From NCBI GenBank assembly GCA_977020255.1, contig CDROCS010002105.1:372001-436000 (forward strand): DNA of 64,000 nt, in the 5' to 3' direction. Positions 5,742-42,690 of this stretch are shown here, in pieces. Under the pieces are notes generated by a model. It saw only the letters and a list, made by a program, of their open reading frames with translations, had not been told where the DNA came from and searched no databases. Each line of letters opens with the position of its first letter. Position 1 is the first letter of the stretch. Origin of the DNA: Obrimoposthia wandeli. Taxonomy: Eukaryota. A program made the translations under genes and the position numbers.

Positions 5742-5916
5742 CCTTGGTTTTGCTTGATTCTTATTTGTGGGTTCCAATTCACCCCATAAAACACCTAATC
5801 TTTATAAAAAGGGCTGGTATTGGTTATCTGCGTTCATTGAGCTAAGTGATGATGGCGTTAATCGTTAACTTCCGATTAAAGCCATGGTTAGGCGTGAAAA
5901 TGAGAGGGCATTTTTT

Positions 5917-6729
5917 ATGGGGAAAGCGAGTAAATATGTCTCTAAAAAGTCAGATAAAAATGGCTTTATAGATTGGAGTGAAGATGAGAATCAAATCTGG
6001 CATGATTTGGTTGTAAGGCAGCTCACTTGCATCAAAGGGAAGGCCTGCGAAGAATACCTTGCAGGGCTAAAATTACTTAACTTACCTACCGACCATGTTC
6101 CGCAGTTAAAAAATATTAATCGAGTGTTGAAAGAAACGACGGGGTGGGAATGTGTAGAAGTACCTGCATTGATTAACTTTGATCGCTTTTTTCATTTGCT
6201 TGCTCATAAACAATTCCCAGTTGCGACCTTTCTACGAAATCGTGATGAATTTGATTATTTGCAAGAGCCTGATTTTTTCCATGAAGTATTTGGTCATTGC
6301 GCGATGCTGACAAACCCCGCTTTTGCTGAGTTTACCCACGCTTATGGGCGATTAGGCTATGAAGCCAGTAAAGAAGATCGCGTGTATTTAGCCCGATTGT
6401 ACTGGTTCACGGTTGAATTCGGTTTAATGAAAACATCTGATCAGCGTACTATTTATGGCGGTGGTATTTTATCTTCCCCTGGCGAGACAGAGTATGTTTA
6501 TAAAGGAATAAAGGCACGCTATAAGCCTTTTGCACCTGTTGATGTAATGCGGACACCTTACCGAATCGATATTATGCAGCCAGTGTATTTTGTTATTAAA
6601 AGTATTGATCAGCTGTATGAACTGGCACAAAAAGACATCATGAGTATGGTGCAAGAAGCCAAAGCTTTGGGGCTACACAAACCGTTATTTCCACCCAAGA
6701 AAAAGGAGCATTTAGGGGAATATGTCTAA
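5917..6729 (+). CDS. phhA: Phenylalanine 4-monooxygenase
   Basis: [39 protein letters not shown]; likely start ATG 5917 (ORF track 5884). Confidence 0.95.
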
Positions 6730-7060
6730 TTTACATGAATTGAAATGCGAAGCTTGCCAAATTGATGCACCAACAGTAACAGATCTTGAATTAGAAGAAA
6801 TGTTACAGGGTATCTCGCAGTGGAGCGTAATAGAGCGTGACGGAATTAAACAACTGGAACGTGAGTTTACATTTAAGAACTTTAAACTGGCTTGGGCTTT
6901 CAGTAATAAAATTGCTGAGTTAGCCGAGGAAGAGTTTCACCACCCAACCATAACGTTAGAGTGGGGGAAAGTGACCGTTTGCTGGTGGAGTCACTCAGTA
7001 AAAGGGCTACATAAGAATGATTTTATTTGCGCAGCAAAGACTGATCAGTGCCTAGAATAG
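6722..7060 (+). CDS. phhB: Pterin-4-alpha-carbinolamine dehydratase
   Basis: [37 protein letters not shown]; overlaps the phhA stop. Confidence 0.95.
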
Positions 7061-22402: not shown

Positions 22403-22716
22403 TTGAAAATTTGAACCTTTTTTAAAATCATGCTGTGCATTTTGGGACATGCTGGGGTACTAAAAGTTAAAGCGTCAAAATCTGAAAAACCAAAACAGAA
22501 GTCGATTTGAGTAATAGAATGTTGTCGGTAACTCATCTGACTTTTCTTTAAAGCATGTACGAATGCATAGATTCTAGCATTTTAGTGAATAGATCGGAAA
22601 ATAAGTCAGTATCAAACACTATACATGGCTTTGATTTGTACAAATTCATTAAGCCACAACAAGTCGGACAGGATTTTTTAAATTTCACAAGAGGGAGCGC
22701 AACGAATCAGAGGTAG

Positions 22717-22934
22717 TCCGCTTGTCAGCTTCTTCACCTTCGTATTTATATCCGTATTTACTTCGGATGCGTTGGTCACCATCGGAAGAAAACGACCTTT
22801 GACCTTTCTTCGACGAACCATTACCTGTTAGTAGTACACCGCCGACTATTGGCGAGCATGGGTAAGGGCAGTGAAAAGCACATCTACGGTTTTTGGACAA
22901 AATGTATTCAAACAATCAGAGTGGCTTATTGCAA
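22717..22934 (-). pseudogene. menB: Decayed internal fragment of menB (direct repeat of 41868-42093)
   Basis: Aligns by eye to intact menB with substitutions and about 3 indels; translates to VLLTGNGSSKKGQRSFSSDGDQRIRSKYGYKYEG versus VLLTGNGPSKKGQWSFSSGGDQRIRGKDGYKYEG. Confidence 0.9.
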
Positions 22935-23053
22935 GTCGTTATTTGTTATATCTGCCTGAAAATAAGACATGTTTTTCCTTACAGTCTATACATACTCACT
23001 TAATTACATATCATGTATGTGGTTGGGTATGGTTATATACAAAAGGAATGTGT

Positions 23054-26000
23054 GTGTTTTATCTAAATAGAATAATTGCGATCGATTCGTTTGCTGCTGG
23101 AAAAGAGAACGTTGTTTATCTAAATGGTCATGTAAATCTAAATGGCGATAATGGCGCAGGTAAAACGACCTTTTTACAACTCATTCCCCCTTTTTTTGGG
23201 GCCTATCCAAGCCAACTTGTTCGACGAAAGAAAACCAAACTTCCCTTTGTTGAATATTTTCTTCCCAATAAAACCAGTTACATCATTTATGAATATATTC
23301 GTGGCGATCAAACTTGCATGGCTGTTATGCGAAGTTCAACAGGGAATCAAAGCTCTCAGGCTCAATTCTTATTGATTGAGCATGGCTATGAACGAAGTTT
23401 GTTTATGCTGCAAACCCAGCAAGGTTTTGAAGCTTTACCTTCATCTGATTTGGCTCGACGAGTAACCGATAAAGGGTGGGTACGAACAAGCCAGTGGCTC
23501 AGTTTGAATGAATACCGCAATGTGATTCAATCCAACATTAATGAACGTAATCTGGCAGATAAAAAGCAACAACATAGAAGAAATGAGAATCGGCGCCGGT
23601 TTGCGTTTTGCCGTCATGGCACCTCTATTCACCATATCGAAAAAGTGGTGATGGGCATTTTTGGTCGCGAACCCTCTTTTGAAACCTTCAAAGCAATCAT
23701 TGTTTCAATCATTCAAAGTGACGTATTTGAAAGTGAGAGTGAAACCACGGAGTTGCATAGTACTTTTATAAACAAAGCCTCGTTAGAGCACTGGGCGAAA
23801 GAATATCGCCAGCTTAAACAGGTTCTTAATAAACAGCCGCAAGCGGATAGTTTAGGCAAGATGGCTAGTGAGTGTCTGTTACTGCGCCAGGAGCGATCGC
23901 GGGTCGCAAGCCTGGTTGTACAGCTGATGAATGAAGTCGAAAGCGTGCTGGCTGAAAAAGTACAGTATGGTGATCAATTGTATAAACAGTCGCAAGATCA
24001 TAATGACCATGCTGTTCAGTGCCAACGGGAATGGACATCAAAGGTGATTGAGCTTGAGGCAGAAGTTACAGCCATTGAGAAAACAATCACAGCACTTGAG
24101 TCAGATCACAAGAGCTATCAAAGCATCAATATTGAGTATTTGAAGCAACTGGTTTCTCGAATTCCCCAGCGCAGTACGCGTATTGAAGAACTCAATCAGC
24201 AGATTAGCCATTTAAAATCGGGAGCCGAGGCAATAGAGCTTCAATATAGCGAGTTAAGGCATGATATTGATAGAACATTTGAAAGCCGAATCCGTGATCG
24301 GGAAGATACCTTCAATCATGATTCTAAGCAGCTTACCCAACGTAAAGATATATTAACTCAGCAGTATAGAGAACAACAAAGCCAGATCCGTGTAGAGGCT
24401 AATCAGAAACGGGAAACACAAGAAGCATTAAAAATCCCGTTGGTTGGAAAGATTGCAGCGTTAAAAGTAATGGCGGAAACCCCACCACTTACCGATGAAC
24501 AGAAAAGCGAATTAGCAGCCAAGCAGCGAGCGGTAAAAGAACTCATTGAGCAGAAGCAACGCTATGATCAACAACATGTTAGCGAGTCGGAAAAGATCCG
24601 ACATTTAGATGCGCAAGTATCAGAGCTAGAAAGCCAGCTCCAAGGGGAAAAGACGCGTCATCAGGGAGTCGAAGCGCGTTATCAAGAATTACTACATTAT
24701 CAAACGCCGAACGAGCATAGCTTACTCTACTTTTTACGCACCTCACAGCCGGATTGGATAACAACTATTGGCAAGGTTATCCAACCTGAATTATTGTTGC
24801 GTACCGATCTGCAACCGCAGCAGCTTTCTTCGACCGATGCGTTATACGGCGTTGAAATAAATCTAGATGCGATCAGCACGTTAGAGCTGGTCGATGAAGA
24901 AAAGTTACAGAATTTGCTGTCAGAAAATCGTGACCAAGCTAAAGCCTTTCAACAGGCAATATCAGGTTATAAAGCCAAACAGGAGAAACTTGCTAGGCAA
25001 TGTATAAAACAACGAAAACTTGTGCAGCAAGTACAATATGAGCTCAAAACTTGTGACAGTAAACTCACACAAGCTAATCAAGCAACGCAAGAGTTAGAGC
25101 ACAAACACCAAGAATATCAATCATCATTAAGTGAGCGCTTTTACCATCAAGCAGCCGAGAAGCAGCAACAACTGCAAAGTTTAGAGAAAGACAATCAAGC
25201 AATTATCGTGCAGTGCGACCAAGACTATCGAGCTTCACAGCAGCAAGAACAAGACGCGTTAAGTAAATTAGCGACCCAAGAAAGAAACTTATTTTCACGT
25301 AAAACGCAGGAAATTAGTGACCTCAGATCTAAGCAAGAAAAAAGGCTAGCAGAAAATGATCAAGAGCGGATGCGAGCTCTCAAGCAAGGAGGCGTTGATA
25401 CGCAAACGCTTCAGAAGCAAGAGCAAGAACGTGAGCGTTTAAAGGCAGAAAATAAACAAGCATTTGAAGCGCGAGAGGTGGTTGAAAAATACCAACGTTG
25501 GTCAACCGATGAATGGCCGCGACATCCAAAATATCAACAAAAGCGTGGTCGCCTAGACAGCCAGCTGACTGAGTATAAGCGCAATGTTGAATTGCAGACA
25601 GTCAAGTTAGAAGATCAAACGAAACAATTTAAGCAACAGTTAACCAAGGTGGAAAATCAACTTAGGCAAATCAAGGAAGATCAGCTAGCTTGTCGAAGCT
25701 TGCAGCAACAGACTTCATCGTATTTCCAGCCGCATATCATTGAAGAAAAAAGCGAAGCAGATACCTTAGCGTTGATTCAGCATCAATGGCAAACCGTGCA
25801 GAAACGTTTAGATGAGGTGAATAAAAACGCAGGGAAATTATTCTATACCCTGAAGAAAGTGTTTCTGCAGGAAATGGATACCAATATCTACCGGTTGTGG
25901 CAACAGTTGGAACAAGAGCATGGCAGTAATGATGATTGGTTAGTGATGGCGGAGCCGCTAAACTTATCTTTCCAGACTGAATTAAAGCAGGTTCAAGCCA

Positions 26001-26749
26001 GCCTATTTATTGAACTGTCAAATACTGCCGAAATAATTCGCACTTTTTATCAATATTTGAGCCAATTTGAACAGAGTATTCAACATAAATCTCAGCAACT
26101 GAGTAAGCAGTTAGCGAATGTGCGCGCATTTGAAGCCATTGAAAAAATTCAGATTCGTCTTGCATCTAAAGTGAAAGAGGAGGCCTACTGGCCTTTACTA
26201 CGAAGTTTTCTTACTGATTATGATAATTGGCAAATTCAAAATCAGTCACTACCTCCGCAGGCTCTGGTCGATAACCTACTAGAGCTCGCGCAACTCTTTT
26301 CTCAACGTAGTAAAACCCATGTTGATCTCACCTTGCTGTTTAATTTAGAGGTGGATGTGGTGGAAAATGGCCATGCAAAAAAAGCAGTGACAGGCGCTGA
26401 GCTGGTTGATATTTCAAGTACCGGGCTCTCATACCTAATATTGATTCAAATATTCATTGCCTTAACCAATTTACTGCGTGGTAAATCTAACACAATGATT
26501 AACTGGCCAGTTGATGAACTCGGTAATTTCTCACGGTATAACAGTGCCAAATTACTGGTGACTTTAACTGAAAATGATATAGCCATTACCAGTGCCTTTC
26601 CCGATCCAGACCCTGAATTGCTAGGGGAATACAAGCACACCTATTACATAGAAAAACCAGGTCGTGACATTGTCACTTTTGTGGCTGGTCATCAAGGGTT
26701 ATCAGCAAGCATTGAAGCCATACTCAATGAGGAGGAAGCCCATGTTTGA
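23054..26749 (+). CDS. SMC/MukB-like ATPase (DUF3584-type; MksB/JetC-like)
   Basis: Walker A GDNGAGKTT, long coiled coil, signature-like ISSTGLSY, Walker B NWPVDELG, SAFPDPD; start moved to GTG 23054 (AAGGA RBS) because the ORF-track start at 22871 lies in the menB scar. Confidence 0.88.
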   Translation: MFYLNRIIAIDSFAAGKENVVYLNGHVNLNGDNGAGKTTFLQLIPPFFGAYPSQLVRRKKTKLPFVEYFLPNKTSYIIYEYIRGDQTCMAVMRSSTGNQSSQAQFLLIEHGYERSLFMLQTQQGFEALPSSDLARRVTDKGWVRTSQWLSLNEYRNVIQSNINERNLADKKQQHRRNENRRRFAFCRHGTSIHHIEKVVMGIFGREPSFETFKAIIVSIIQSDVFESESETTELHSTFINKASLEHWAKEYRQLKQVLNKQPQADSLGKMASECLLLRQERSRVASLVVQLMNEVESVLAEKVQYGDQLYKQSQDHNDHAVQCQREWTSKVIELEAEVTAIEKTITALESDHKSYQSINIEYLKQLVSRIPQRSTRIEELNQQISHLKSGAEAIELQYSELRHDIDRTFESRIRDREDTFNHDSKQLTQRKDILTQQYREQQSQIRVEANQKRETQEALKIPLVGKIAALKVMAETPPLTDEQKSELAAKQRAVKELIEQKQRYDQQHVSESEKIRHLDAQVSELESQLQGEKTRHQGVEARYQELLHYQTPNEHSLLYFLRTSQPDWITTIGKVIQPELLLRTDLQPQQLSSTDALYGVEINLDAISTLELVDEEKLQNLLSENRDQAKAFQQAISGYKAKQEKLARQCIKQRKLVQQVQYELKTCDSKLTQANQATQELEHKHQEYQSSLSERFYHQAAEKQQQLQSLEKDNQAIIVQCDQDYRASQQQEQDALSKLATQERNLFSRKTQEISDLRSKQEKRLAENDQERMRALKQGGVDTQTLQKQEQERERLKAENKQAFEAREVVEKYQRWSTDEWPRHPKYQQKRGRLDSQLTEYKRNVELQTVKLEDQTKQFKQQLTKVENQLRQIKEDQLACRSLQQQTSSYFQPHIIEEKSEADTLALIQHQWQTVQKRLDEVNKNAGKLFYTLKKVFLQEMDTNIYRLWQQLEQEHGSNDDWLVMAEPLNLSFQTELKQVQASLFIELSNTAEIIRTFYQYLSQFEQSIQHKSQQLSKQLANVRAFEAIEKIQIRLASKVKEEAYWPLLRSFLTDYDNWQIQNQSLPPQALVDNLLELAQLFSQRSKTHVDLTLLFNLEVDVVENGHAKKAVTGAELVDISSTGLSYLILIQIFIALTNLLRGKSNTMINWPVDELGNFSRYNSAKLLVTLTENDIAITSAFPDPDPELLGEYKHTYYIEKPGRDIVTFVAGHQGLSASIEAILNEEEAHV

Positions 26750-27356
26750 GCAACTAGCGTGGCAATTATTAGCGGGGGAGTTTATTTGCCAGTACCGGAC
26801 TCCGGAATGCTATCGCTATTTAGCGAGTGATGATAATCAGCAGCGGATGCGTGCGTGGCTGAAGCTGATTAATTTGGAATTGGTATCTACACCGCAGGGC
26901 AGTGCTTGGTATGCGGCTTGGATTGATTTGAATGATAAACCCAATGAAATTGATAAAGTATTTCGTGAGGTGGTACAAGATATCAAGCCACTTATTCATT
27001 TTTTGAGCTTGCTGATGAGTGCAAATCATCACGACGTGGCATTATCATCCGGTGATGTTATCCGTTTTCATGAATTATTGGCATCCATTAATGAACAGCC
27101 TGCGTTACGAGAAGAGTTGAAAGGGATCGCGATATTCTGGAAAAGTAATAAAGACAGCGTGGATGGTCAGCTTGGGGTGATTTTGTCGCGCATGGTAGAG
27201 ACGGGATTAATTTTTGAATCGAATCGCGATCAGAAAATCTATAAAGCGAGCGGAAAATTAGAATGGTTTTATGAGTTACTCGATTTCTATGCTGAACAGC
27301 ATCAAATTGTGGAATTAGAACCGGAATTTGAGCCAGAGAATGGGGATCTGTTCTGA
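26742..27356 (+). CDS. MksE/JetB-like kite subunit
   Basis: About 204 aa, LLAGEFIC, winged-helix-like C-terminal half (ILSRMVETGLI...IYKASGK); ATG 26742 follows GAGGAGG and overlaps the SMC stop. Confidence 0.7.
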   Translation: MFEQLAWQLLAGEFICQYRTPECYRYLASDDNQQRMRAWLKLINLELVSTPQGSAWYAAWIDLNDKPNEIDKVFREVVQDIKPLIHFLSLLMSANHHDVALSSGDVIRFHELLASINEQPALREELKGIAIFWKSNKDSVDGQLGVILSRMVETGLIFESNRDQKIYKASGKLEWFYELLDFYAEQHQIVELEPEFEPENGDLF

Positions 27357-28567
27357 TGTCACAGTCTGTAATTTCTGAGGTCATTAAAGCACTGCATGCT
27401 CAGCAGGGTAATATTGAGGATGCATATCATCAACGAGAAGTACAAGTTGAGCGTTCTCGCAGTTGGCAAACACTCGCAAATCAAGGGTTAGTGAGTGGCA
27501 CTTATGAACAGGGATTTCGACTATCCAGTGCCTTGCGTGACATGTTTGATGTGGCGGTACAAAAAGAGCAACGTCGAATTCGGGCCGTTGACATAGCGGC
27601 TTGGCAAGAGCAGATGTTGCATGCGGTAGAACAATACACTCATGCTAAGAACGAGCAACGTAACGACGATGCCGACCATCACCTCGAAGCCATTCGCAAC
27701 GATGTATACAGTTTAACGGATAGCGTAAAAGATAATACCGCGTTACTGGATCTCAAACTCGATAACCACTTTGGGTATGTCAGCACCCTTGAAGAGAAAA
27801 AACGGGAAAATCAGCAAGTGATCCAACAAGTCACACGGCTTTCTGATTCGTTGGCTTTGCTAGACCGAGATGAGTTAGATCGGCTGGCCAGCCAGCATAT
27901 TCCCCTGCGGCGAGTTTTTTACAACGATTTGCTCACCCAGGCACAAAGAACACGAGAAAAGCTCCAGCACTTGTTACCTAAGCTAAGACATAAACTATTT
28001 GGTTATCATCGTCCCGAACACCATGCACAACGGCTTAAACAGTGGCGTACTTATCTCTATCGCCATGCGGAGTTTGAATTTAGCTGCGAGACCGAGCCTG
28101 AAAAAGCGCTCTATAATCGGTTGCCTAGAAAAACAGGTGCGATCCAGCCTCGAATTCACTTGGGTATTGCCAAAGTCAATCAACAAGTTGCAGAGCGTTT
28201 GGCAAATAAAGTCTTCACTGAACGCTCCCAAACTACTGATCCGAAGGTGAAATCTGAAAAATGCCAGTTAACCCTTTCGCAGCAGTCGGAACGTGAGTTG
28301 AATCCCTCTCAGTTTCAAACTCTGGTTGTCAGCTTTATACGGTCTTTGCCACCTAATAAACCGGTTTCTGCATTACTATTTTTGCAACAGGCAGATCAGG
28401 CATTACCGAGCAATTTATGGCTGTTTGCATTACATGTCTGGGTAAGACAAGATCTGGATAAGTCACCATTAAAACAGCGTATCTCTGCTGAGCCGATTCT
28501 TAGTGCTCAGCCTTCTGGAGTTGGAAATATGATCATTCACGACTATAAATTTACACGCTATGCTTAA
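27356..28567 (+). CDS. MksF/JetA-like kleisin subunit
   Basis: 403 aa; N-terminal wHTH-like segment (LANQGLV...GFRLSSALRDMFD), helical middle (LLD.KLDN.FGYVSTLEEK.REN); coupled to both neighbours. Confidence 0.68.
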   Translation: MSQSVISEVIKALHAQQGNIEDAYHQREVQVERSRSWQTLANQGLVSGTYEQGFRLSSALRDMFDVAVQKEQRRIRAVDIAAWQEQMLHAVEQYTHAKNEQRNDDADHHLEAIRNDVYSLTDSVKDNTALLDLKLDNHFGYVSTLEEKKRENQQVIQQVTRLSDSLALLDRDELDRLASQHIPLRRVFYNDLLTQAQRTREKLQHLLPKLRHKLFGYHRPEHHAQRLKQWRTYLYRHAEFEFSCETEPEKALYNRLPRKTGAIQPRIHLGIAKVNQQVAERLANKVFTERSQTTDPKVKSEKCQLTLSQQSERELNPSQFQTLVVSFIRSLPPNKPVSALLFLQQADQALPSNLWLFALHVWVRQDLDKSPLKQRISAEPILSAQPSGVGNMIIHDYKFTRYA

Positions 28568-29441
28568 AATTAAACAGCTTCAGACACTGGCTAATATCAT
28601 CCTACAAAAGAAAGTCAAAGTTACTTTAAGTAAATGGCTTGCTGAATTAAGGGATACTTATGGCTTTGGTATACTTGATATCAAAGGCAAGCACCTGTTG
28701 CTGTCTGAGCAAGACTACCAAACATTGGAATGGATCATTCGGCAATATGTCGCTCCTTCCATTGAACTAGACCAACTGCTTAAACCTAATGCGAAAGAAC
28801 GTATCCAAACCTCAGCGATATTTAACGATGATAAAGCTGGGGCTGCAAAGGCGGGAGAAGAATGGCTACTTGTACGTTCAATTCTCGGGCCGTTGAAGCT
28901 TGAGCAAGCAATAGTAAATAATCCCGTTAGTGCTATCTGTGTAATGGATAAAGAGACACTCGTAAATCATCAACATCAAGCGTTGCTGGTGGTGGAAAAT
29001 AAAGCATTAATGAAAAGCATTCATCAGGCTAAATTACCAGAAGAGGTGATTCGTATGGATCCCTTGGTGATTTACCGCGGCGATGAGTATTTTTCAACTC
29101 GCACCAGTCTGGATTTTATTAAGAACCAATTAAAAGAACATCCTGAGAAACCGCTTTATTTGTTTACAGACTTCGATCCAAAAGGTTTAGTAATAGCGAT
29201 GGCCTATCCAAGTATTAAAGGATTTATTGTGCCAACTCAGGAGATAGTCTGGCAAAAACATACTAATTTTGACAACTTTATTAAACAAACTGAAAGCATG
29301 CGTACACTAGAGTTGAATGCAATGTTATGGAATACCAATATTCAACATATGATTAGCTTGATGGATAAAAAGCAAACGGCTATCACTCAAGAAATAATGG
29401 TTGCCAGATCGTTACCACTAACAACCATTAACATAAGTTAA
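28560..29441 (+). CDS. MksG/JetD-like Toprim nuclease (DUF2220-like)
   Basis: Toprim motifs LLVVENK, VIYRGD and YLFTDFDPKGLVIA; last gene of the SMC operon. Confidence 0.78.
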   Translation: MLKIKQLQTLANIILQKKVKVTLSKWLAELRDTYGFGILDIKGKHLLLSEQDYQTLEWIIRQYVAPSIELDQLLKPNAKERIQTSAIFNDDKAGAAKAGEEWLLVRSILGPLKLEQAIVNNPVSAICVMDKETLVNHQHQALLVVENKALMKSIHQAKLPEEVIRMDPLVIYRGDEYFSTRTSLDFIKNQLKEHPEKPLYLFTDFDPKGLVIAMAYPSIKGFIVPTQEIVWQKHTNFDNFIKQTESMRTLELNAMLWNTNIQHMISLMDKKQTAITQEIMVARSLPLTTINIS

Positions 29442-30292
29442 AACAGATAAGGCTGTAATTCCGCTAAATTTTCAATCACTAATTGCTGTGCTTCCGGTTT
29501 AGGCTCAAGTTTAGTTGGGTCGATATTGAATGCCTGTAAGGTATACCGTACTAAAGGACCTCGGGTAATTAGCTCCAGTCTGCCATCTTCCATACCGTAA
29601 TCTTTCTCAATGACTTTCTTTTGTGCATCGCTTAATCGTTGGTCGGGGATAAGGCTAATTGTGGTATTTGTATTCCATGGAAGATCCCCATCGGCTTTGT
29701 TTGGGGATTCGTCCATGATCTCTGGCTCACCGCTAAAGCGACTAAGAACAAAGTCACGATACTCTTTTCGCTTTTCACAGTAGGCGCGTACATGCCATCG
29801 TAAAGGTGTACAAACGAGTGTATGCGGCGCAATTACTCGGTATTCCGGCTCCGGATTTTCTAATGATATGTAGCATATCTCAACACGTTTCTTCTCGCGG
29901 GCTGCGCGAACCAGTACGCGCAAGATTTCTGGCTGGATATGACGCACTGGTGAATGCAGCATTTCTGTATTAGCAAAACCGAGATCTAGGCTATCAAATG
30001 TATGGCTAATATCCTTATTTCTGCTGATAACGTGCAGATACTCGTCTGCTGTGCCCGTTGTTAGTTTAGGTGAAAAAATCGGCGTAGGTTTATAGCCTTT
30101 TAAGTGTTTATCGTACTCAATGTTGCCTGGTGCGATATCTTTAGCGTAATTGTTGATGTCTTTAGACGCTTGCTGACGGCCAATGCCAAAGCTATTGCAT
30201 AAGTGGTTTGTGGTTAGTCTGCCTTCCCATTGAACAATAATCTCAATCAAACGGTAGCGGGTAAGTAAATCCCATCGTAGTGGCCAGCTCAT
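29438..30292 (-). CDS. WYL-domain transcriptional regulator (BrxR/CapW-like)
   Basis: N-terminal wHTH RYRLIEII..WEGRLTTNHL...FGIGRQQASKDI..Y; WYL core Y.SL..P....R.I.PH.LV....RWHVRAYCE...YRDFVLSR; start ATG 30292 with GAGG RBS. Confidence 0.9.
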   Translation of the reverse strand: MSWPLRWDLLTRYRLIEIIVQWEGRLTTNHLCNSFGIGRQQASKDINNYAKDIAPGNIEYDKHLKGYKPTPIFSPKLTTGTADEYLHVISRNKDISHTFDSLDLGFANTEMLHSPVRHIQPEILRVLVRAAREKKRVEICYISLENPEPEYRVIAPHTLVCTPLRWHVRAYCEKRKEYRDFVLSRFSGEPEIMDESPNKADGDLPWNTNTTISLIPDQRLSDAQKKVIEKDYGMEDGRLELITRGPLVRYTLQAFNIDPTKLEPKPEAQQLVIENLAELQPYLF

Positions 30293-30431
30293 AATCATCC
30301 TCTGAGTATAGAAATAGATGTGCGCGAAAAAGTTACATGTAAGTGTAAACAGTATAGACAGGTAGTCAACGGCTACATATATTGAATGGGTATTAAGGCA
30401 CGGAATATACATTTTAGGTGAGGATTTGGCC

Positions 30432-32027
30432 ATGACTGTAATAGCTCAAACGTTCAACGATGAAATTGAAGTACTCAAGCAAACCAATAATTTTGATTTT
30501 ATAGAGTGTAGTTTTTCTGCGTTGTATAAATTGAGTCAGCAGGCAGAGCAGTATTATCCAACCGATCAAGCGTGTTGCTTATTGAAAGTCAGACTATTTG
30601 TTGAATTATGGTGTAATGAAGTGGCCAGCCAACTGTTTATCACACACCCCAAAAATAGTGACTTATTTACCAAAATCAGTGGGGTCTCTGCACATCAGAA
30701 AATTCCTCATTACATTTCGGATGTTCTGAATCAGCTGCGTGTTGAAGGTAATCGTCAAGTACATATTGTGCAGGATATGTACGGCCAATGGAAAAGCGAT
30801 CATTGGCTGTCGAGCCTGAAAATGAAGCAAATTATGCAAGGTGTCCATGAACTGGCGTATTTTCTTGAATACAGTATGAAAGAAAAATCCTATGAACACT
30901 TTGTCGAATGGAAAGAACCCCAACGCAATCAAATGTCAGAATATGTTTATGAGGCGATGTCTGGAAACGCTGAGGCAACCTTTAAAATAGCTAAACATTA
31001 TTCAGTGTTACTCGAGCAACTTGAAAAGCAACCGCACACTCGAGAAGACCAATACCTGTTACAACGTGACTTAGGTTATTGGTTACGAAAAGCGGATGAT
31101 CAGCAGCACCCTGAAACATGGCTATTATATGCAACATCTTATGTGAACAAGCATTTAGTGGTGCCTAGTAACTGTTCTGTTAATGATTACTTTTTAAAAG
31201 CGATAGAGTGCGATAGTGATGGTGAAGCTGAATACCAGTTTGGCCTCTATTTAGACCGAAAAAATGAGCAAAAGCGAGCCATTGGTTATATCGAGGCTGC
31301 GGCAGCGAAAAGGCACCATCAGGCACTTCGAAAATTACAGGAACATTATTGGCACAAAGATAACGATAAATATGAGTTCTATGTCTCCTCTGGTGTCGAG
31401 GCGAAAGAATCAAGATCGTTTCTATTGATGGCTTTTGTCGAGATTGATAAATGGCTTAAGTATCCAGAGGATGAATTACAAGCGAGAAAATCACGTTCAG
31501 CTTTATTATGTTCATTGCATCGTAATGTCGTGGGAAGTGGATTTTTGCTGGGTTACTGTCATGTGTTTGGTTACTTAGGTTACAAGCAAGATCAGTCTAT
31601 GGGGTTAAAAATGATGGCCGAACATCATGGAAATGTCTCGATTTTTATTCAAAGTACTAAGTTGGCCTTTGATGCATTTAGTCTTGATGTTGACTATGCC
31701 ACGAAAGCGATCAAAGTCGCGCCTTTAGCGCTAAAGTATCTGCCAGAGGAACAAAAACCGACTCTGAAGTTTGACCTAGCAATGCTTGCTTTAGAGGAAA
31801 TGAGAGCCGGTAAAACCGTAAAAATACCGCTCGATGTAAAAAGCTTAATAAGAGAATCAGCCGAGGATGGATATGTTCCCGCTATGGAATTTACGTCTTC
31901 AAAAGAAGGAAAGGCATTGTTGGAAGATACCAGTATAAGAATGAAGCGCCGAACAAATAAAGTGGTTGATCGTTCTAAACAAAAGAAAGCGAAAAAACAG
32001 GCTCGAAAAGCAAAACGTAATAAATAA
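30432..32027 (+). CDS. DUF4145 (HEPN-like) N-terminal domain + Sel1-like repeats + basic tail
   Basis: N-terminus NFDFI...LY.L...AE..YP.D....LLK.RLF.E ... LNQLRVEGNRQVH resembles the DUF4145 domain of type I HsdR; Sel1-like AEYQFGLYL...AIGYIEAAA and LLGYCHVFGYLGYKQDQSMGL; tail KQKKAKKQARKAKRNK. Confidence 0.65.
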   Translation: MTVIAQTFNDEIEVLKQTNNFDFIECSFSALYKLSQQAEQYYPTDQACCLLKVRLFVELWCNEVASQLFITHPKNSDLFTKISGVSAHQKIPHYISDVLNQLRVEGNRQVHIVQDMYGQWKSDHWLSSLKMKQIMQGVHELAYFLEYSMKEKSYEHFVEWKEPQRNQMSEYVYEAMSGNAEATFKIAKHYSVLLEQLEKQPHTREDQYLLQRDLGYWLRKADDQQHPETWLLYATSYVNKHLVVPSNCSVNDYFLKAIECDSDGEAEYQFGLYLDRKNEQKRAIGYIEAAAAKRHHQALRKLQEHYWHKDNDKYEFYVSSGVEAKESRSFLLMAFVEIDKWLKYPEDELQARKSRSALLCSLHRNVVGSGFLLGYCHVFGYLGYKQDQSMGLKMMAEHHGNVSIFIQSTKLAFDAFSLDVDYATKAIKVAPLALKYLPEEQKPTLKFDLAMLALEEMRAGKTVKIPLDVKSLIRESAEDGYVPAMEFTSSKEGKALLEDTSIRMKRRTNKVVDRSKQKKAKKQARKAKRNK

Positions 32028-32186: not shown

Positions 32187-33203
32187 CCTGATTACCACTT
32201 AAATTCCGCCAATTGACTACACTTAAAATGAAATAAAAAGTGAGGCGGTGATCATGGCTAAAAATAAAGTCCAATTCCAAAAAAGTATTTCAATACATGC
32301 TTTTATTTCACAACTAGGTACTGAAGAGCAATGTCGAAAACGACTGTTTGATATGCGATGGCCTACTGGTTACCTATGTGAACATTGTGGCTGTGATAAG
32401 TATTGTGAATTGAAATCAAGAAAACTTTATCAATGTAACCAGTGCCATCATCAAGGATCAGTTACGTCTGGCACCTTATTTTCCGCTTCAAAATTGCCAT
32501 TAAACATATGGTTTTTAGCTATTTACCTCATAACTCAAGAGAAAAATGGTATTTCTGCATTAGAGCTGTCTCGCCAGCTTGGCATTTCCTATAACGCGGC
32601 ATGGCGTATGAAGCATAAATTGATGCAAACAATGAAAGAGCGAGATGATGAAACACCATTGAATGGTTACATTCAACTGGACGATGTTTATTGGGGAGGA
32701 GTCCACCGTGGCACCCGAGGGCGTGGAGCCAAAGGAAAACGTCCTTTCGTTGCCGCAGTATCAATGAACGAAGATGGTCACCCAATTAACATGCGATTTA
32801 GTGTTGTAACAGGTTTTAAAACCAAAGAATTAACGCGTTGGGCGAAAGCGAATCTTGTACCTAAATCTCTCGTTATTTCTGATGGTTTGGCTTGCTTTAA
32901 GGGGGTTAAAAAAGCGGATGTTTTTCACCTAGCTATCGTCACTGGCGGCGGTGCTGATTGCGTAGAATTGCCTTACTTTCAATGGGTCAACACAATGATT
33001 AGTAATGTGAAAAATTCAATGCACGGTACTTACCATGCAATAAACAAAAAACATTTACCTCGTTATCTCGGAGAATTCTGTTTTAAGTTCAATAGGCGCT
33101 TCAATCTTGAAAAAATGCTCGAACAGCTCATTTACTCAAGTATCCAGACAGCACCGATGCCTGAGCGGTTACTTAAACTGGCTGAGGCTCGGTGGTAATC
33201 AGG
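32187..33203 (+). mobile_element. Intact IS1595-family insertion sequence (1017 bp)
   Basis: Terminal inverted repeats CCTGATTACCAC / GTGGTAATCAGG; 8-bp target duplication TAAATGTA at 32179-32186 and 33204-33211. Confidence 0.95.
32254..33198 (+). CDS. IS1595-family DDE transposase
   Basis: Zinc ribbon CEHC...YQCNQCHHQ.SVTSGTLF, GISALELSRQLGISYNAAW, IQLDDVYWGG, VISDG, KHLPRYLGEF.FKFNRR. Confidence 0.95.
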   Translation: MAKNKVQFQKSISIHAFISQLGTEEQCRKRLFDMRWPTGYLCEHCGCDKYCELKSRKLYQCNQCHHQGSVTSGTLFSASKLPLNIWFLAIYLITQEKNGISALELSRQLGISYNAAWRMKHKLMQTMKERDDETPLNGYIQLDDVYWGGVHRGTRGRGAKGKRPFVAAVSMNEDGHPINMRFSVVTGFKTKELTRWAKANLVPKSLVISDGLACFKGVKKADVFHLAIVTGGGADCVELPYFQWVNTMISNVKNSMHGTYHAINKKHLPRYLGEFCFKFNRRFNLEKMLEQLIYSSIQTAPMPERLLKLAEARW

Positions 33204-41302: not shown

Positions 41303-42199
41303 TTAGTAATGCCAAGGAAAGCGGCTGAAGTCTTGATCTCGTTTTTCCAAAAAGGCATCGCGGCCTTCTTGTGCTTCTTCGGTGCCATAGGCTAGGCGAG
41401 TTGCTTCACCTGCAAATAGTTGCTGTCCAACTAAGCCATCGTCAGCCATGTTGAAACCGTATTTAAGCATACGCATCGCAGTGGGTGATTTGCTATTGAT
41501 CTCTTTAGCCCAAACAAGCGCTTCATTTTCAAGTTCAAAGTGGTCAATAACCTTATTGACCATACCCATGTCATAGGCTTCTTGCGCACTGTAGTTGAAA
41601 CCGCAGAAGAATATTTCACGGGCACGTTTTTGGCCAATCATCTTGGCAAGGTAAGCCGAGCCGTAGCCTGAATCAAATGATGCTACATCAGGATCTGTCT
41701 GCTTGAATACAGCGTGTTCTTTTGATGCAAGAGTCAAGTCACACACTACGTGCAAGCTATGACCGCCACCTACCGCCCAGCCTGGTACTACAGCAATGAC
41801 GACTTTCGGCATAAAGCGAATCATACGCTGAACTTCAAGGATATGTAGGCGACCCATGCGAGCAACATCCGCTTTGCCAGCTTCTGCACCTTCGTATTTA
41901 TATCCGTCTTTGCCTCGGATACGTTGGTCACCACCGGAAGAAAACGACCATTGGCCTTTCTTCGACGGACCATTACCGGTTAGCAGTACACAGCCAACAT
42001 CAGACGATTGGCGAGCATGATCAAGGGCATTGAAAAGCTCATCTACAGTTTTTGGACGAAATGCATTCAAACAATCAGGGCGGCTTATTGCAATACGAAC
42101 CGTACCGTGCGCTTTAGCGCGATGGTAGGTGATGTCTTCAAAATCAAAGCCAGGGACTTCATCCCACAATTCAGGATTAAAAATTTCTTTGCTGGTCAT
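41303..42199 (-). CDS. menB: 1,4-dihydroxy-2-naphthoyl-CoA synthase
   Basis: DITYHR, NAFRPKTVDEL, FSSGGDQ, RLHILEVQR.IRFMPK, AVGGGHSLHVVCDLT, SFDSGYGS, EGRDAFLEKR; start ATG 42199 (ORF track 42286). Confidence 0.95.
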   Translation of the reverse strand: MTSKEIFNPELWDEVPGFDFEDITYHRAKAHGTVRIAISRPDCLNAFRPKTVDELFNALDHARQSSDVGCVLLTGNGPSKKGQWSFSSGGDQRIRGKDGYKYEGAEAGKADVARMGRLHILEVQRMIRFMPKVVIAVVPGWAVGGGHSLHVVCDLTLASKEHAVFKQTDPDVASFDSGYGSAYLAKMIGQKRAREIFFCGFNYSAQEAYDMGMVNKVIDHFELENEALVWAKEINSKSPTAMRMLKYGFNMADDGLVGQQLFAGEATRLAYGTEEAQEGRDAFLEKRDQDFSRFPWHY

Positions 42200-42690
42200 G
42201 ATGACGGTTGCCTCATTGGTTAGATGAGCTAAGGCTATGGCGTTAGCGCTAAATGTCAATGATTTATGAAGAATTGTGACAATCATCGTAGGGATTATTT
42301 GGTGCTGGCTTATTAATCAAGCAGATCTCGCGAGTTCATTCGACCAAAAAGAAAGACTTTAATGTAGGTCCGTTCTCGATCATACACTGATGAATTTCCG
42401 ATTTAGCAGGCAACGGTGTGTATATATAAAGTACCAAGTCATTAATGGTGTACTTGATTATGACTTGGGGTAATTGACGAGGGTGTTTGTACCCACGTTT
42501 TTCTGTTTTATATACAGTCATATTATATTTTTTGAATTTTCGATATTCGATATCAACATTCCGCACGTTTTCACTTGGATGTTGACTGTTAAGTCTTTAG
42601 TATCAGTTGGTTGTATGAGATTGGTGAAATGTGATGGATATTATTAAATATGCGTACTATAGAAATGTTATGTGTGAAAAAAGGTGAATC

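What the first reader, a model, noticed from the sequence alone, without database searches (positions are those of the whole stretch)
23054..29441. Wadjet/MksBEFG-like SMC system with rearranged gene order (SMC-kite-kleisin-Toprim)
Seen in sequence: four coupled genes, namely an SMC ATPase with Walker A/B motifs, ~204-aa and 403-aa partners, and a Toprim protein (VENK, DFDPKG). Established: Wadjet (JetABCD/MksBEFG) extrudes and cuts small circular DNA, with the non-SMC subunits normally encoded upstream of the SMC gene. Inference: here the SMC gene comes first (C-B-A-D) and is DUF3584-like with a divergent signature (SSTG), so this may be a distinct subtype that standard Wadjet models miss. 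The kite and kleisin assignments rest on size, order and remembered family patterns.
Basis: partly seen in the sequence, partly recalled or inferred. Interest (0 to 1): 0.72.

Follow-up and report, generated by a model that had tools for sequence, protein, structure and literature searches.

The report
Reversed-order Wadjet-like SMC nuclease operon
This is an intact four-gene DNA-looping motor plus DNA-cutting enzyme, a little-studied relative of the Wadjet anti-plasmid system with its genes in a different order, sitting in a horizontally acquired island; the lineage is already listed in a published data table but has never been tested.

Summary
Four overlapping, co-directional genes encode an SMC ATPase (Pfam DUF3584, 569 bits, full length), a KITE subunit (Pfam MksE), a 403-aa protein with no family hit that folds like the MukF/JetA kleisin, and a 293-aa Toprim protein (Pfam DUF7281) that folds like Topo VI-A, JetD, Spo11 and MksG.

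PADLOC Wadjet models give only weak partial hits and none for the kleisin.

The SMC-first order is not a local rearrangement. It was present in every proteobacterial relative I examined. Bürmann et al. 2025 (Cell, Data S1) already list it as operon structure "BEFG/BEF": 12 of 869 clusters, forming one clade with support 100 in their MksB tree. The paper's main text does not discuss that clade.

The window copy is a deep branch. Its nearest distinct relative is 35-41% identical, and its nearest named relatives are plasmid-borne. It lies in a ~19-kb island bracketed by a menB duplication.

Most likely function: an SMC sensor that directs Toprim cleavage of invading circular DNA. This is inferred, not shown.

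The main rival is a chromosome-maintenance or DNA-damage role. The SMC gene was found in 81/81 Shewanella species sampled, but the nuclease in only 35/81, and Shewanella mutants are cisplatin-sensitive.

The scan met this lineage before on another contig (s1-200874).

The parts
23054..26749 (+). MksB/JetC-like SMC ATPase (1231 aa; alternative start ATG 23048). Walker A at residues 31-38, a conserved central block at about 552-604 (presumed hinge), SSTGLSYL signature at 1121-1128, Walker B PVDE at 1152-1155.
   Evidence: Pfam DUF3584 569 bits, full length; motif conservation across 35 homologues; 35% identity over the full length to the nearest distinct relative, L061.
26742..27356 (+). MksE/JetB-like KITE subunit (204 aa, single KITE, not the tandem KITE of type II Wadjet).
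   Evidence: Pfam MksE PF21980 42.9 bits against a cut-off of 27; alignment with relatives; PADLOC JetB1 only 14 bits.
27356..28567 (+). MukF/JetA-type kleisin (403 aa): N-terminal winged helix (1-56), helical bundle (58-236), disordered linker (about 241-313), C-terminal winged helix (317-401).
   Evidence: No Pfam, NCBIfam or PADLOC hit. AF2 model from a 25-sequence alignment, pLDDT 68. Foldseek top 10 are all MukF or JetA. VIA Z 11.6-12.4 to MukF over 204-277 residues.
28560..29441 (+). MksG/JetD-like Toprim nuclease (293 aa): small N-terminal CAP-like winged helix with no conserved tyrosine, then a Toprim domain with E146 and D204-x-D206.
   Evidence: Pfam DUF7281 111 bits. AF2 pLDDT 83.6. 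Foldseek matches: Topo VI-A 1d3y/2zbk (probability 1.00), JetD 7til (0.97), Spo11 8urq (0.98) and, more weakly, MksG 8b7f (probability 0.44, E 0.049). Invariant acidic residues and no tyrosine column above 70% in residues 1-110.
22987..23014 (+). Promoter-like site (TATACA-16-TATCAT) about 35 bases upstream of the SMC start; weak evidence only.
   Evidence: The number of such sites in the region equals the shuffle expectation.
22658..22938 (-). Degraded menB fragment with in-frame stops. It marks the left edge of the ~19-kb island that carries the operon. The matching part of the intact menB lies at 41868-42093.
   Evidence: tblastn and blastn: 86% DNA identity over 226 bp.

Best explanation
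The locus encodes a complete SMC-kleisin-KITE complex plus a Toprim nuclease. It belongs to the proteobacterial 'BEFG' clade of the Wadjet/Mks group. By homology, two MksB-like ATPases, a MukF-like kleisin and a KITE dimer form a DNA loop-extruding sensor. That sensor is probably a dimer of motors joined through the kleisin N-terminal winged helix and bundle. The sensor licenses a dimeric JetD/MksG-like Toprim nuclease to cut DNA by metal-dependent hydrolysis, since no catalytic tyrosine is conserved. The most likely target is invading circular DNA such as plasmids. Shown here: gene content, order, coupling, motifs, folds, clade membership, and location in an island. Inferred: complex formation, loop extrusion, and the target and consequence of cleavage.
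For: Four intact coupled genes. Family and fold assignments for all four subunits. Catalytic motifs are conserved. The same B-E-F-G order occurs in the complete loci among 27 from Moritella, Shewanella, Psychromonas, Colwellia, Ferrimonas and Oleiphilus, in five proteobacterial plasmids and in the nearest metagenomic relatives. Two of my loci (L031 Ferrimonas futtsuensis, L029 Paraferrimonas) are the very operons listed as BEFG in Bürmann et al. 2025 Data S1, and the 12 B-first MksB proteins form one clade with support 100 inside their Wadjet-group tree. Mobile, conflict-like context: the island is bracketed by a menB duplication and also holds a WYL regulator, a DUF4145 protein, an IS1595 transposase and a dynamin-like operon. 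The SMC has homologues on 43 plasmids, 25 of them conjugative or mobilizable. The window SMC sits on a long branch next to plasmid copies. Across 401 Gammaproteobacteria species sampled the nuclease family was found in only 9-11.
Against: There is no functional data for any member as a defence system. The only experimental data on the family point to DNA-damage tolerance and motility: Shewanella transposon mutants of the SMC and the two downstream genes are cisplatin-sensitive (Price et al., bioRxiv 10.1101/072470). In Shewanella the SMC gene is core (81/81 species sampled) while the nuclease was found in 35/81. That pattern is unlike a typical defence system. An intact BEFG operon sits on a 40-kb Acinetobacter plasmid. 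This would be awkward if the system cut every small circle as type I Wadjet does. The sequence profiles of all four subunits find no solved Wadjet or MukBEF chain, so mechanistic transfer rests on fold and architecture alone.
Confidence: 0.6

Rival explanations
1. It is a chromosome-maintenance or DNA-damage-tolerance Mks complex. B-E-F acts on the host chromosome, for example at stalled or cross-linked replication forks, and the Toprim protein is an optional processing nuclease rather than an immune effector.
For: Shewanella DUF3584 mutants and the two downstream genes are co-fit and specifically cisplatin-sensitive. The SMC gene was found in 81/81 Shewanella species sampled, while the nuclease was found in 35/81. 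The Shewanella genomes tested keep a separate Smc (3 of 3, TIGR02168) plus ScpB, so BEF is an extra, retained system. Two Moritella-like contigs of this same assembly differ by a clean 935-bp presence/absence of the nuclease gene, with B-E-F intact in both. Alteromonadales copies follow taxonomy in the SMC tree.
Against: The window copy is not of that vertically inherited kind. It is in an inserted island with an IS element and defence-like neighbours. It has the nuclease with all catalytic residues. It groups with plasmid-borne copies on long branches. The family is sparse across Gammaproteobacteria.
Confidence: 0.25
2. It is an inactive or decaying remnant carried along in the island.
For: Decaying copies exist elsewhere. 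The SMC and Toprim genes are each split in Psychromonas sp. KJ10-2 (L028). The SMC is interrupted by an IS256-like element on an Enterobacter plasmid, and only N-terminal stubs remain on several Enterobacterales plasmids.
Against: All four window ORFs are full length with conserved catalytic residues. An independent sample holds the same four-gene operon, with a Toprim protein 98% identical to the window's.
Confidence: 0.05
3. It is a non-kleisin SMC-like system such as Lamassu, Rad50/SbcCD or Gabija-type, mislabelled as Wadjet-like.
For: One clade member's SMC head gives weak PADLOC hits to LmuB (22 bits) and AriA (21 bits). This is generic ABC-ATPase similarity.
Against: A KITE above the Pfam cut-off and a MukF-like kleisin are encoded between the SMC and the nuclease. 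The SMC is 1231 aa with a central conserved hinge-like block. The clade sits inside the MksB tree of Bürmann et al..
Confidence: 0.03

Closest known systems
'BEFG/BEF' operons of the Wadjet group listed in Data S1 of Bürmann et al., Cell 2025 (PMC7617805). Examples: Psychrobacter arcticus 273-4, Acinetobacter sp. CIP 64.2, an Acinetobacter indicus plasmid, Vibrio breoganii, Ferrimonas futtsuensis, Paraferrimonas.
   Same: Same four components, same B-E-F-G order, similar sizes (about 1230 / 205-210 / 405-425 / 285-305 aa). Two listed operons are my loci L031 and L029, which the family HMMs hit in the same order.
   Different: The window proteins are at most about 26% identical to those members, 35-41% to the nearest metagenomic relative. 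The published table holds only 12 clusters and omits the Shewanella, Colwellia and Moritella copies found here. The paper's text does not discuss the clade.
Wadjet types I-III (JetABCD / MksBEFG / EptABCD)
   Same: SMC + kleisin + KITE + Toprim nuclease lacking a catalytic tyrosine. The kleisin has an N-terminal winged helix plus bundle. The nuclease folds like JetD/MksG.
   Different: Gene order is B-E-F-G, not F-E-B-G or G-F-E-B (609 and 155 of 869 clusters). The nuclease is about 290 aa, shorter than the solved JetD and MksG chains (about 365-375 residues). The KITE is single, unlike the tandem KITE of type II. PADLOC type I-III HMMs barely register and the kleisin is not detected.
FEBG operons with a DUF3584-like SMC on Bacteroidota plasmids (Persicobacter psychrovividus pPP6, Phocaeicola massiliensis)
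   Same: Homologous SMC (136-202 bits to the family HMM), a short Toprim protein of about 290-305 aa directly downstream, and a KITE of about 190 aa.
   Different: Canonical order, with the kleisin-sized and KITE genes upstream of the SMC. No profile-profile similarity was detected between their upstream ~400-aa protein and the BEFG kleisin (low power, only 2 sequences).
MukBEF / MksBEF chromosome condensins
   Same: MukF is the best structural match of the kleisin. The KITE matches Pfam MksE. Nuclease-free B-E-F versions of this clade exist.
   Different: Only the DUF3584 Pfam model hits the SMC; no MukB or other SMC model does. A nuclease gene is present here. The order is B-E-F rather than mukF-E-B.

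Membership tests
Wadjet / Mks group (SMC-kleisin-KITE, with or without nuclease) | SMC-family ATPase with Walker A, signature and Walker B motifs, long arms and a hinge | tested here: met
   DUF3584 full-length match at 569 bits. Motifs and a central conserved block are conserved in 35 homologues. The arms and hinge were not modelled in 3D.
Wadjet / Mks group | KITE subunit (MksE/JetB/MukE-like) | tested here: met
   Pfam MksE 42.9 bits against a cut-off of 27.
Wadjet / Mks group | MukF/JetA-type kleisin: N-terminal winged helix and bundle, flexible linker, C-terminal winged helix | tested here: met
   The AF2 model has that domain order. Foldseek top 10 are all MukF or JetA. VIA Z about 12 over 204-277 residues. 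There is no sequence-level support.
Wadjet / Mks group | JetD/MksG-type Toprim nuclease with conserved E and DxD and no catalytic tyrosine | tested here: met
   DUF7281 111 bits. Fold matches to Topo VI-A, JetD and Spo11 (probability 0.97-1.00) and a weaker one to MksG (0.44). E146, D204 and D206 are invariant and no tyrosine is conserved in the N-terminal domain.
Wadjet types I-III as defined by Doron et al. / PADLOC | Gene order jetA-jetB-jetC-jetD (F-E-B-G, or G-F-E-B) | tested here: not met
   The order is B-E-F-G here and in all proteobacterial relatives examined.
Wadjet types I-III as defined by Doron et al. / PADLOC | Significant hits of all four proteins to type-specific HMMs | tested here: not met
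   Best hits are JetC2 16 bits, JetB1 14 bits, JetD3 23 bits, and none for JetA. Two other clade members behave the same way. DefenseFinder could not be run.
Wadjet type II | Tandem KITE subunit | tested here: not met
   The KITE is 204 aa with a single MksE match. The tandem-KITE feature is taken from bioRxiv 10.1101/2025.03.10.642339.
BEFG clade of the Wadjet group (Bürmann et al. 2025, Data S1) | B-E-F-G order and homology of the SMC to listed members | tested here: met
   tblastn of the window SMC hits L031 and L029, which are listed operons, at E 3e-36 and 2e-31. The order is shared. The clade has support 100 in their tree. The window sequence itself was not placed in their alignment.
Wadjet (functional definition) | ATP-dependent cleavage or restriction of small circular DNA | not testable with these tools
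   Needs transformation and cleavage assays.
MukBEF | MukB-type SMC, mukF-E-B order, no nuclease | tested here: not met
   Only DUF3584 hits the SMC in the Pfam scan; no MukB model does. A nuclease is present and the order differs.

The most novel reading that the evidence does not exclude
The BEFG clade is a functionally distinct branch of the Wadjet group, not just a re-ordered Wadjet. In this reading its B-E-F core acts on chromosomal DNA damage or replication problems, and is fixed in whole genera such as Shewanella. The short Toprim nuclease is a detachable module that converts the core into a mobile-element restriction system when the operon travels on plasmids and islands, as in this window. 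Its target rule would then differ from the size-limited circle cutting of type I, which would explain intact copies on a 40-kb plasmid.
Probability: 0.25. Interest if true: 0.75.

Novelty: new member of a known kind. Interest (0 to 1): 0.5.

Why it matters
SMC-based immunity is understood almost entirely from type I Wadjet. This clade offers a compact, very divergent four-subunit version that PADLOC's Wadjet models do not detect.

It also exists in two natural states. One is core and often nuclease-free in Alteromonadales. The other is mobile and nuclease-bearing on plasmids and islands. That contrast makes the open question of how chromosome-folding SMC complexes and plasmid-cutting ones interconvert directly testable.

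Practically, defence-system annotation pipelines could add models for it. RefSeq currently labels the four proteins 'ATP-binding protein' plus three 'hypothetical protein'.

Tried and rejected
1. A word-based homologue search with the kleisin found only the window's own protein. Relatives came instead from the assembly itself and from a pattern scan with the SMC alignment.
2. Sequence profiles of all four subunits against PDB chains gave nothing meaningful. Only fold comparison linked them to MukF/JetA and to Topo VI-A/JetD.
3. hhalign of the BEFG kleisin profile against the upstream ~400-aa protein of the Bacteroidota FEBG operons found no similarity. With only two sequences on one side this is uninformative.
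4. The IQ-TREE run did not finish. The FastTree result has many long branches and the rooting is unreliable. I use it only for the window's nearest neighbours and for the taxonomy-like pattern in Alteromonadales.
5. I considered whether BEF is the sole condensin of Shewanella and rejected it: the three Shewanella genomes tested each have a canonical Smc and ScpB. The Pfam SMC_hinge model missed those Smc proteins, so that negative result was not used.
7. The WYL regulator as part of the system: it is convergent and overlaps the Toprim stop by 4 bases. WYL is absent from the plasmid loci and from the more distant metagenomic relative L061. The 98%-identical copy L062 does have a short unidentified convergent ORF at the same 4-base overlap, cut by the contig end. 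I treat WYL as a neighbour more likely tied to the divergent DUF4145 gene.
8. The long mechanical ORF start at 22871 is rejected. It overlaps the menB pseudo-fragment on the other strand and adds residues absent from all homologues.


Full report
**The locus**

Window 23054-29441 holds four co-directional genes whose ends overlap by 8, 1 and 8 bases.
- The first ORF opens mechanically at GTG 22871. All homologues begin at the residues encoded from ATG 23048 / GTG 23054, and an AAGGA lies 6 nt upstream of 23054.
- The upstream extension also overlaps a degraded menB fragment on the other strand.
- The products are 1231, 204, 403 and 293 aa.

**Identity of the four proteins**

*SMC.* It matches Pfam DUF3584 end to end (569 bits, profile positions 2-1191 of 1191).
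- Walker A (GDNGAGKT), the signature-like SSTGLSYL and Walker B (PVDELG) are each at least 80% conserved in 35 homologues.
- A central block (residues about 552-604) is also conserved and is presumably the hinge.

*KITE.* The 204-aa protein passes the Pfam MksE cut-off (42.9 against 27 bits).

*Kleisin.* The 403-aa protein has no hit in Pfam, NCBIfam or PADLOC.
- A word-based search found only the window's own protein.
- An AlphaFold2 model from a 25-sequence alignment (pLDDT 68) has an N-terminal winged helix, a long helical bundle, a disordered linker of about 70 residues and a C-terminal winged helix.
- Its ten best Foldseek matches are all MukF or JetA chains.
- VIA-align gives Z 11.6-12.4 to MukF over 204-277 residues that include the N-terminal winged helix. 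Unrelated helical bundles reach similar Z but match only residues about 75-215.
- I accept it as a MukF/JetA-type kleisin on fold and architecture. There is no sequence-level support.

*Toprim protein.* The 293-aa protein matches Pfam DUF7281 (111 bits) and, just below cut-off, the Topo VI-A/Spo11 Toprim model.
- Its model (pLDDT 83.6) is matched best by Topo VI-A, JetD and Spo11, and more weakly by C. glutamicum MksG (probability 0.44, E 0.049).
- E146, D204 and D206 are invariant in 20 homologues.
- No tyrosine column reaches more than 70% in the N-terminal CAP-like domain, and the window has leucine at that column.
- This points to a hydrolytic nuclease like JetD/MksG rather than a topoisomerase.

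**Is it a canonical Wadjet?**

No.
- PADLOC's Wadjet HMMs give only marginal, partial hits: JetC2 16 bits over 47 residues, JetB1 14 bits, JetD3 23 bits, and nothing for JetA.
- Two other members of the lineage behave the same way.
- Profiles of all four subunits find no Wadjet or MukBEF chain in the PDB by sequence.
- The KITE is single, unlike the tandem KITE of type II.
- The nuclease is shorter than the solved JetD and MksG chains.

**Is the gene order a local rearrangement?**

No, it is the hallmark of a lineage.
- The 1.35-Gb assembly that holds the window contains three more such loci on other bacterial contigs.
- A scan of species-representative genomes returned 27 loci in Moritella, Shewanella, Psychromonas, Colwellia, Ferrimonas and Oleiphilus. 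Every complete one has SMC-KITE-kleisin, usually followed by the Toprim gene.
- The same order is found on plasmids of Aromatoleum, Acinetobacter, Marinobacter, Pseudomonas and Vibrio breoganii.
- It is also found in the nearest metagenomic relatives.
- Bacteroidota plasmids carry a homologous SMC and short Toprim gene in the canonical F-E-B-G order. B-E-F-G is therefore a derived state of a DUF3584-type Wadjet lineage.

**Prior knowledge**

*Bürmann et al. (Cell 2025, PMC7617805).* They built a curated set of 'Wadjet group' operons by iterative profile search.
- Their Data S1 lists operon structures FEBG 609, GFEB 155, FEB 93, BEFG 11 and BEF 1.
- The B-first entries include Ferrimonas futtsuensis NZ_AUGL01000008 and Paraferrimonas NZ_WINH01000005, which are my loci L031 and L029.
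- In their MksB tree the 12 B-first proteins form one clade with support 100.
- Neither the main-text passages I searched nor the supplementary figure legends mention this clade.
- No paper in the library mentions DUF7281.

*Price et al. (bioRxiv 10.1101/072470).* They report that DUF3584 in three Shewanella species is specifically important for cisplatin resistance and for motility. It is co-fit with the two downstream hypothetical genes.

*Current annotation.* RefSeq names the four proteins 'ATP-binding protein' plus three 'hypothetical protein'.

The lineage is therefore catalogued and has Pfam families, but it is uncharacterised and unnamed as a defence type.

**Two lifestyles within the clade**

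*Core and vertical.*
- In a sample of 81 Shewanella species the SMC gene was found in all 81, as a single copy. The nuclease family was found in only 35, always about 2.3 kb downstream.
- The three Shewanella genomes tested also have a canonical Smc and ScpB, so this is an additional, retained system.
- Two Moritella-like contigs of this assembly are collinear at 88-90% DNA identity, except that 935 bp holding the nuclease gene in one are replaced by 37 bp in the other. An earlier scan note (s1-200874) reached the same reading.
- Alteromonadales copies roughly follow taxonomy in a FastTree of the SMC.

*Mobile and sporadic.*
- The nuclease family was found in only 9-11 of 401 Gammaproteobacteria species sampled.
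- SMC homologues occur on 43 plasmids, 25 of them conjugative or mobilizable.
- These copies sit on long branches.

**Where the window copy belongs**

It is of the mobile kind.
- Its nearest named relatives are plasmid-borne (Aromatoleum, Pseudomonas; SH-like support 97). No named relative exceeds about 26% identity.
- The nearest distinct relative is a metagenomic contig with 35% (SMC) and 41% (kleisin) identity.
- Another sample holds the same four-gene operon, with a Toprim protein 98% identical to the window's.
- The operon begins about 110 bp after a degraded menB fragment (22658-22938, minus strand). That fragment is 86% identical to part of the intact menB at 41868-42093. The ~19 kb in between is therefore an insertion.
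- The island also carries a WYL regulator, a DUF4145 protein, an IS1595-family transposase and a dynamin-like operon.

**Mechanism**

The best-supported reading (confidence about 0.6) has three steps.
- The B-E-F proteins form a Wadjet-like loop-extruding DNA sensor.
- The sensor licenses the Toprim nuclease to cut foreign circular DNA.
- Cutting is hydrolytic, because no catalytic tyrosine is conserved.

Identity and clade membership are well supported. Complex formation, loop extrusion and the target are inferred from homologous systems.

The main rival (about 0.25) is a chromosome-maintenance or DNA-damage role like that suggested for the core Shewanella copies. Evidence against a plain type I-like rule is an intact operon on a 40-kb Acinetobacter plasmid.

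Expression could not be examined.

**Verdict**

The 'rearranged' order is the norm of an already catalogued, uncharacterised clade, so this is a new, very divergent member of a known kind. It has moderate interest because the clade is untested and spans both core and mobile states.

Noticed in passing
window 22658-22938 (-) and 41868-42093 (-): A degraded menB fragment with in-frame stops is 86% identical over 226 bp to part of the intact menB gene (41303-42286). It brackets a ~19-kb insertion that contains the SMC operon, the WYL gene, the DUF4145 gene, an IS1595 transposase and a dynamin-like operon.
   Followed up: partly
window 29438-30433 (-) and 30426-32027 (+): A WYL-domain regulator (PADLOC WYL 95 bits) is convergent with the Toprim gene, with a 4-base overlap. 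It is divergent from a 533-aa DUF4145 protein. It is not conserved next to the SMC operon in most relatives.
   Followed up: partly
window 32248-33198 (+): IS1595-family transposase (DDE_Tnp_IS1595 108 bits plus a zinc ribbon) inside the island.
   Followed up: no
L012 (G000:C1957) 5799-6733 versus L013 (G000:C410) 6156-6192: Two Moritella-like contigs of the same assembly are collinear at 88-90% identity. The 935 bp holding the Toprim gene in one are replaced by 37 bp in the other, while SMC, KITE and kleisin stay intact.
   Followed up: yes
81 Shewanella species genomes (G001, G004-G083): The DUF3584 SMC was found in 81/81, as a single copy. The DUF7281 nuclease was found in only 35/81, always just downstream. 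This is a core SMC system with an optional nuclease, alongside a canonical Smc in the three genomes tested.
   Followed up: partly
G003 (Colwellia sp. 12G3, locus L019): No MukB, SMC_prok_B or ScpB match was found in this draft genome, although the BEFG operon is present. If this is real, the operon could be its only SMC complex. It rests on a single draft genome and first-look filters.
   Followed up: no
L042 (Acinetobacter sp. ACNIH1 plasmid pACI-b25a, 40,249 bp): An intact four-gene BEFG operon flanked by ISAba12, a recombinase and an IS3 element on a small circular plasmid. This is hard to reconcile with indiscriminate cutting of small circles.
   Followed up: partly
L028 (Psychromonas sp. 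KJ10-2 chromosome); plasmid hits H11 and H26-H30: Decaying copies. The SMC and Toprim genes are each split into two ORFs in L028. The SMC is interrupted by IS256-like ISSod4 on an Enterobacter plasmid. Only ~220-aa N-terminal stubs next to IS elements remain on Raoultella, Citrobacter, Leclercia and Enterobacter plasmids.
   Followed up: no
L061 1-3386 (+): In the nearest distinct relative, the operon is preceded by a 2091-aa helicase (DEAD, YjiV_N, Helicase_C, MZB) and a 207-aa unassigned protein. This may be another defence-type neighbour.
   Followed up: no
G000 as a whole: The assembly has 1.35 Gb in 6912 contigs and includes several large bacterial contigs (a Colwellia-like 4.68-Mb contig, Moritella-like contigs, and the window's contig). 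The window comes from a bacterium co-assembled with a much larger genome.
   Followed up: no
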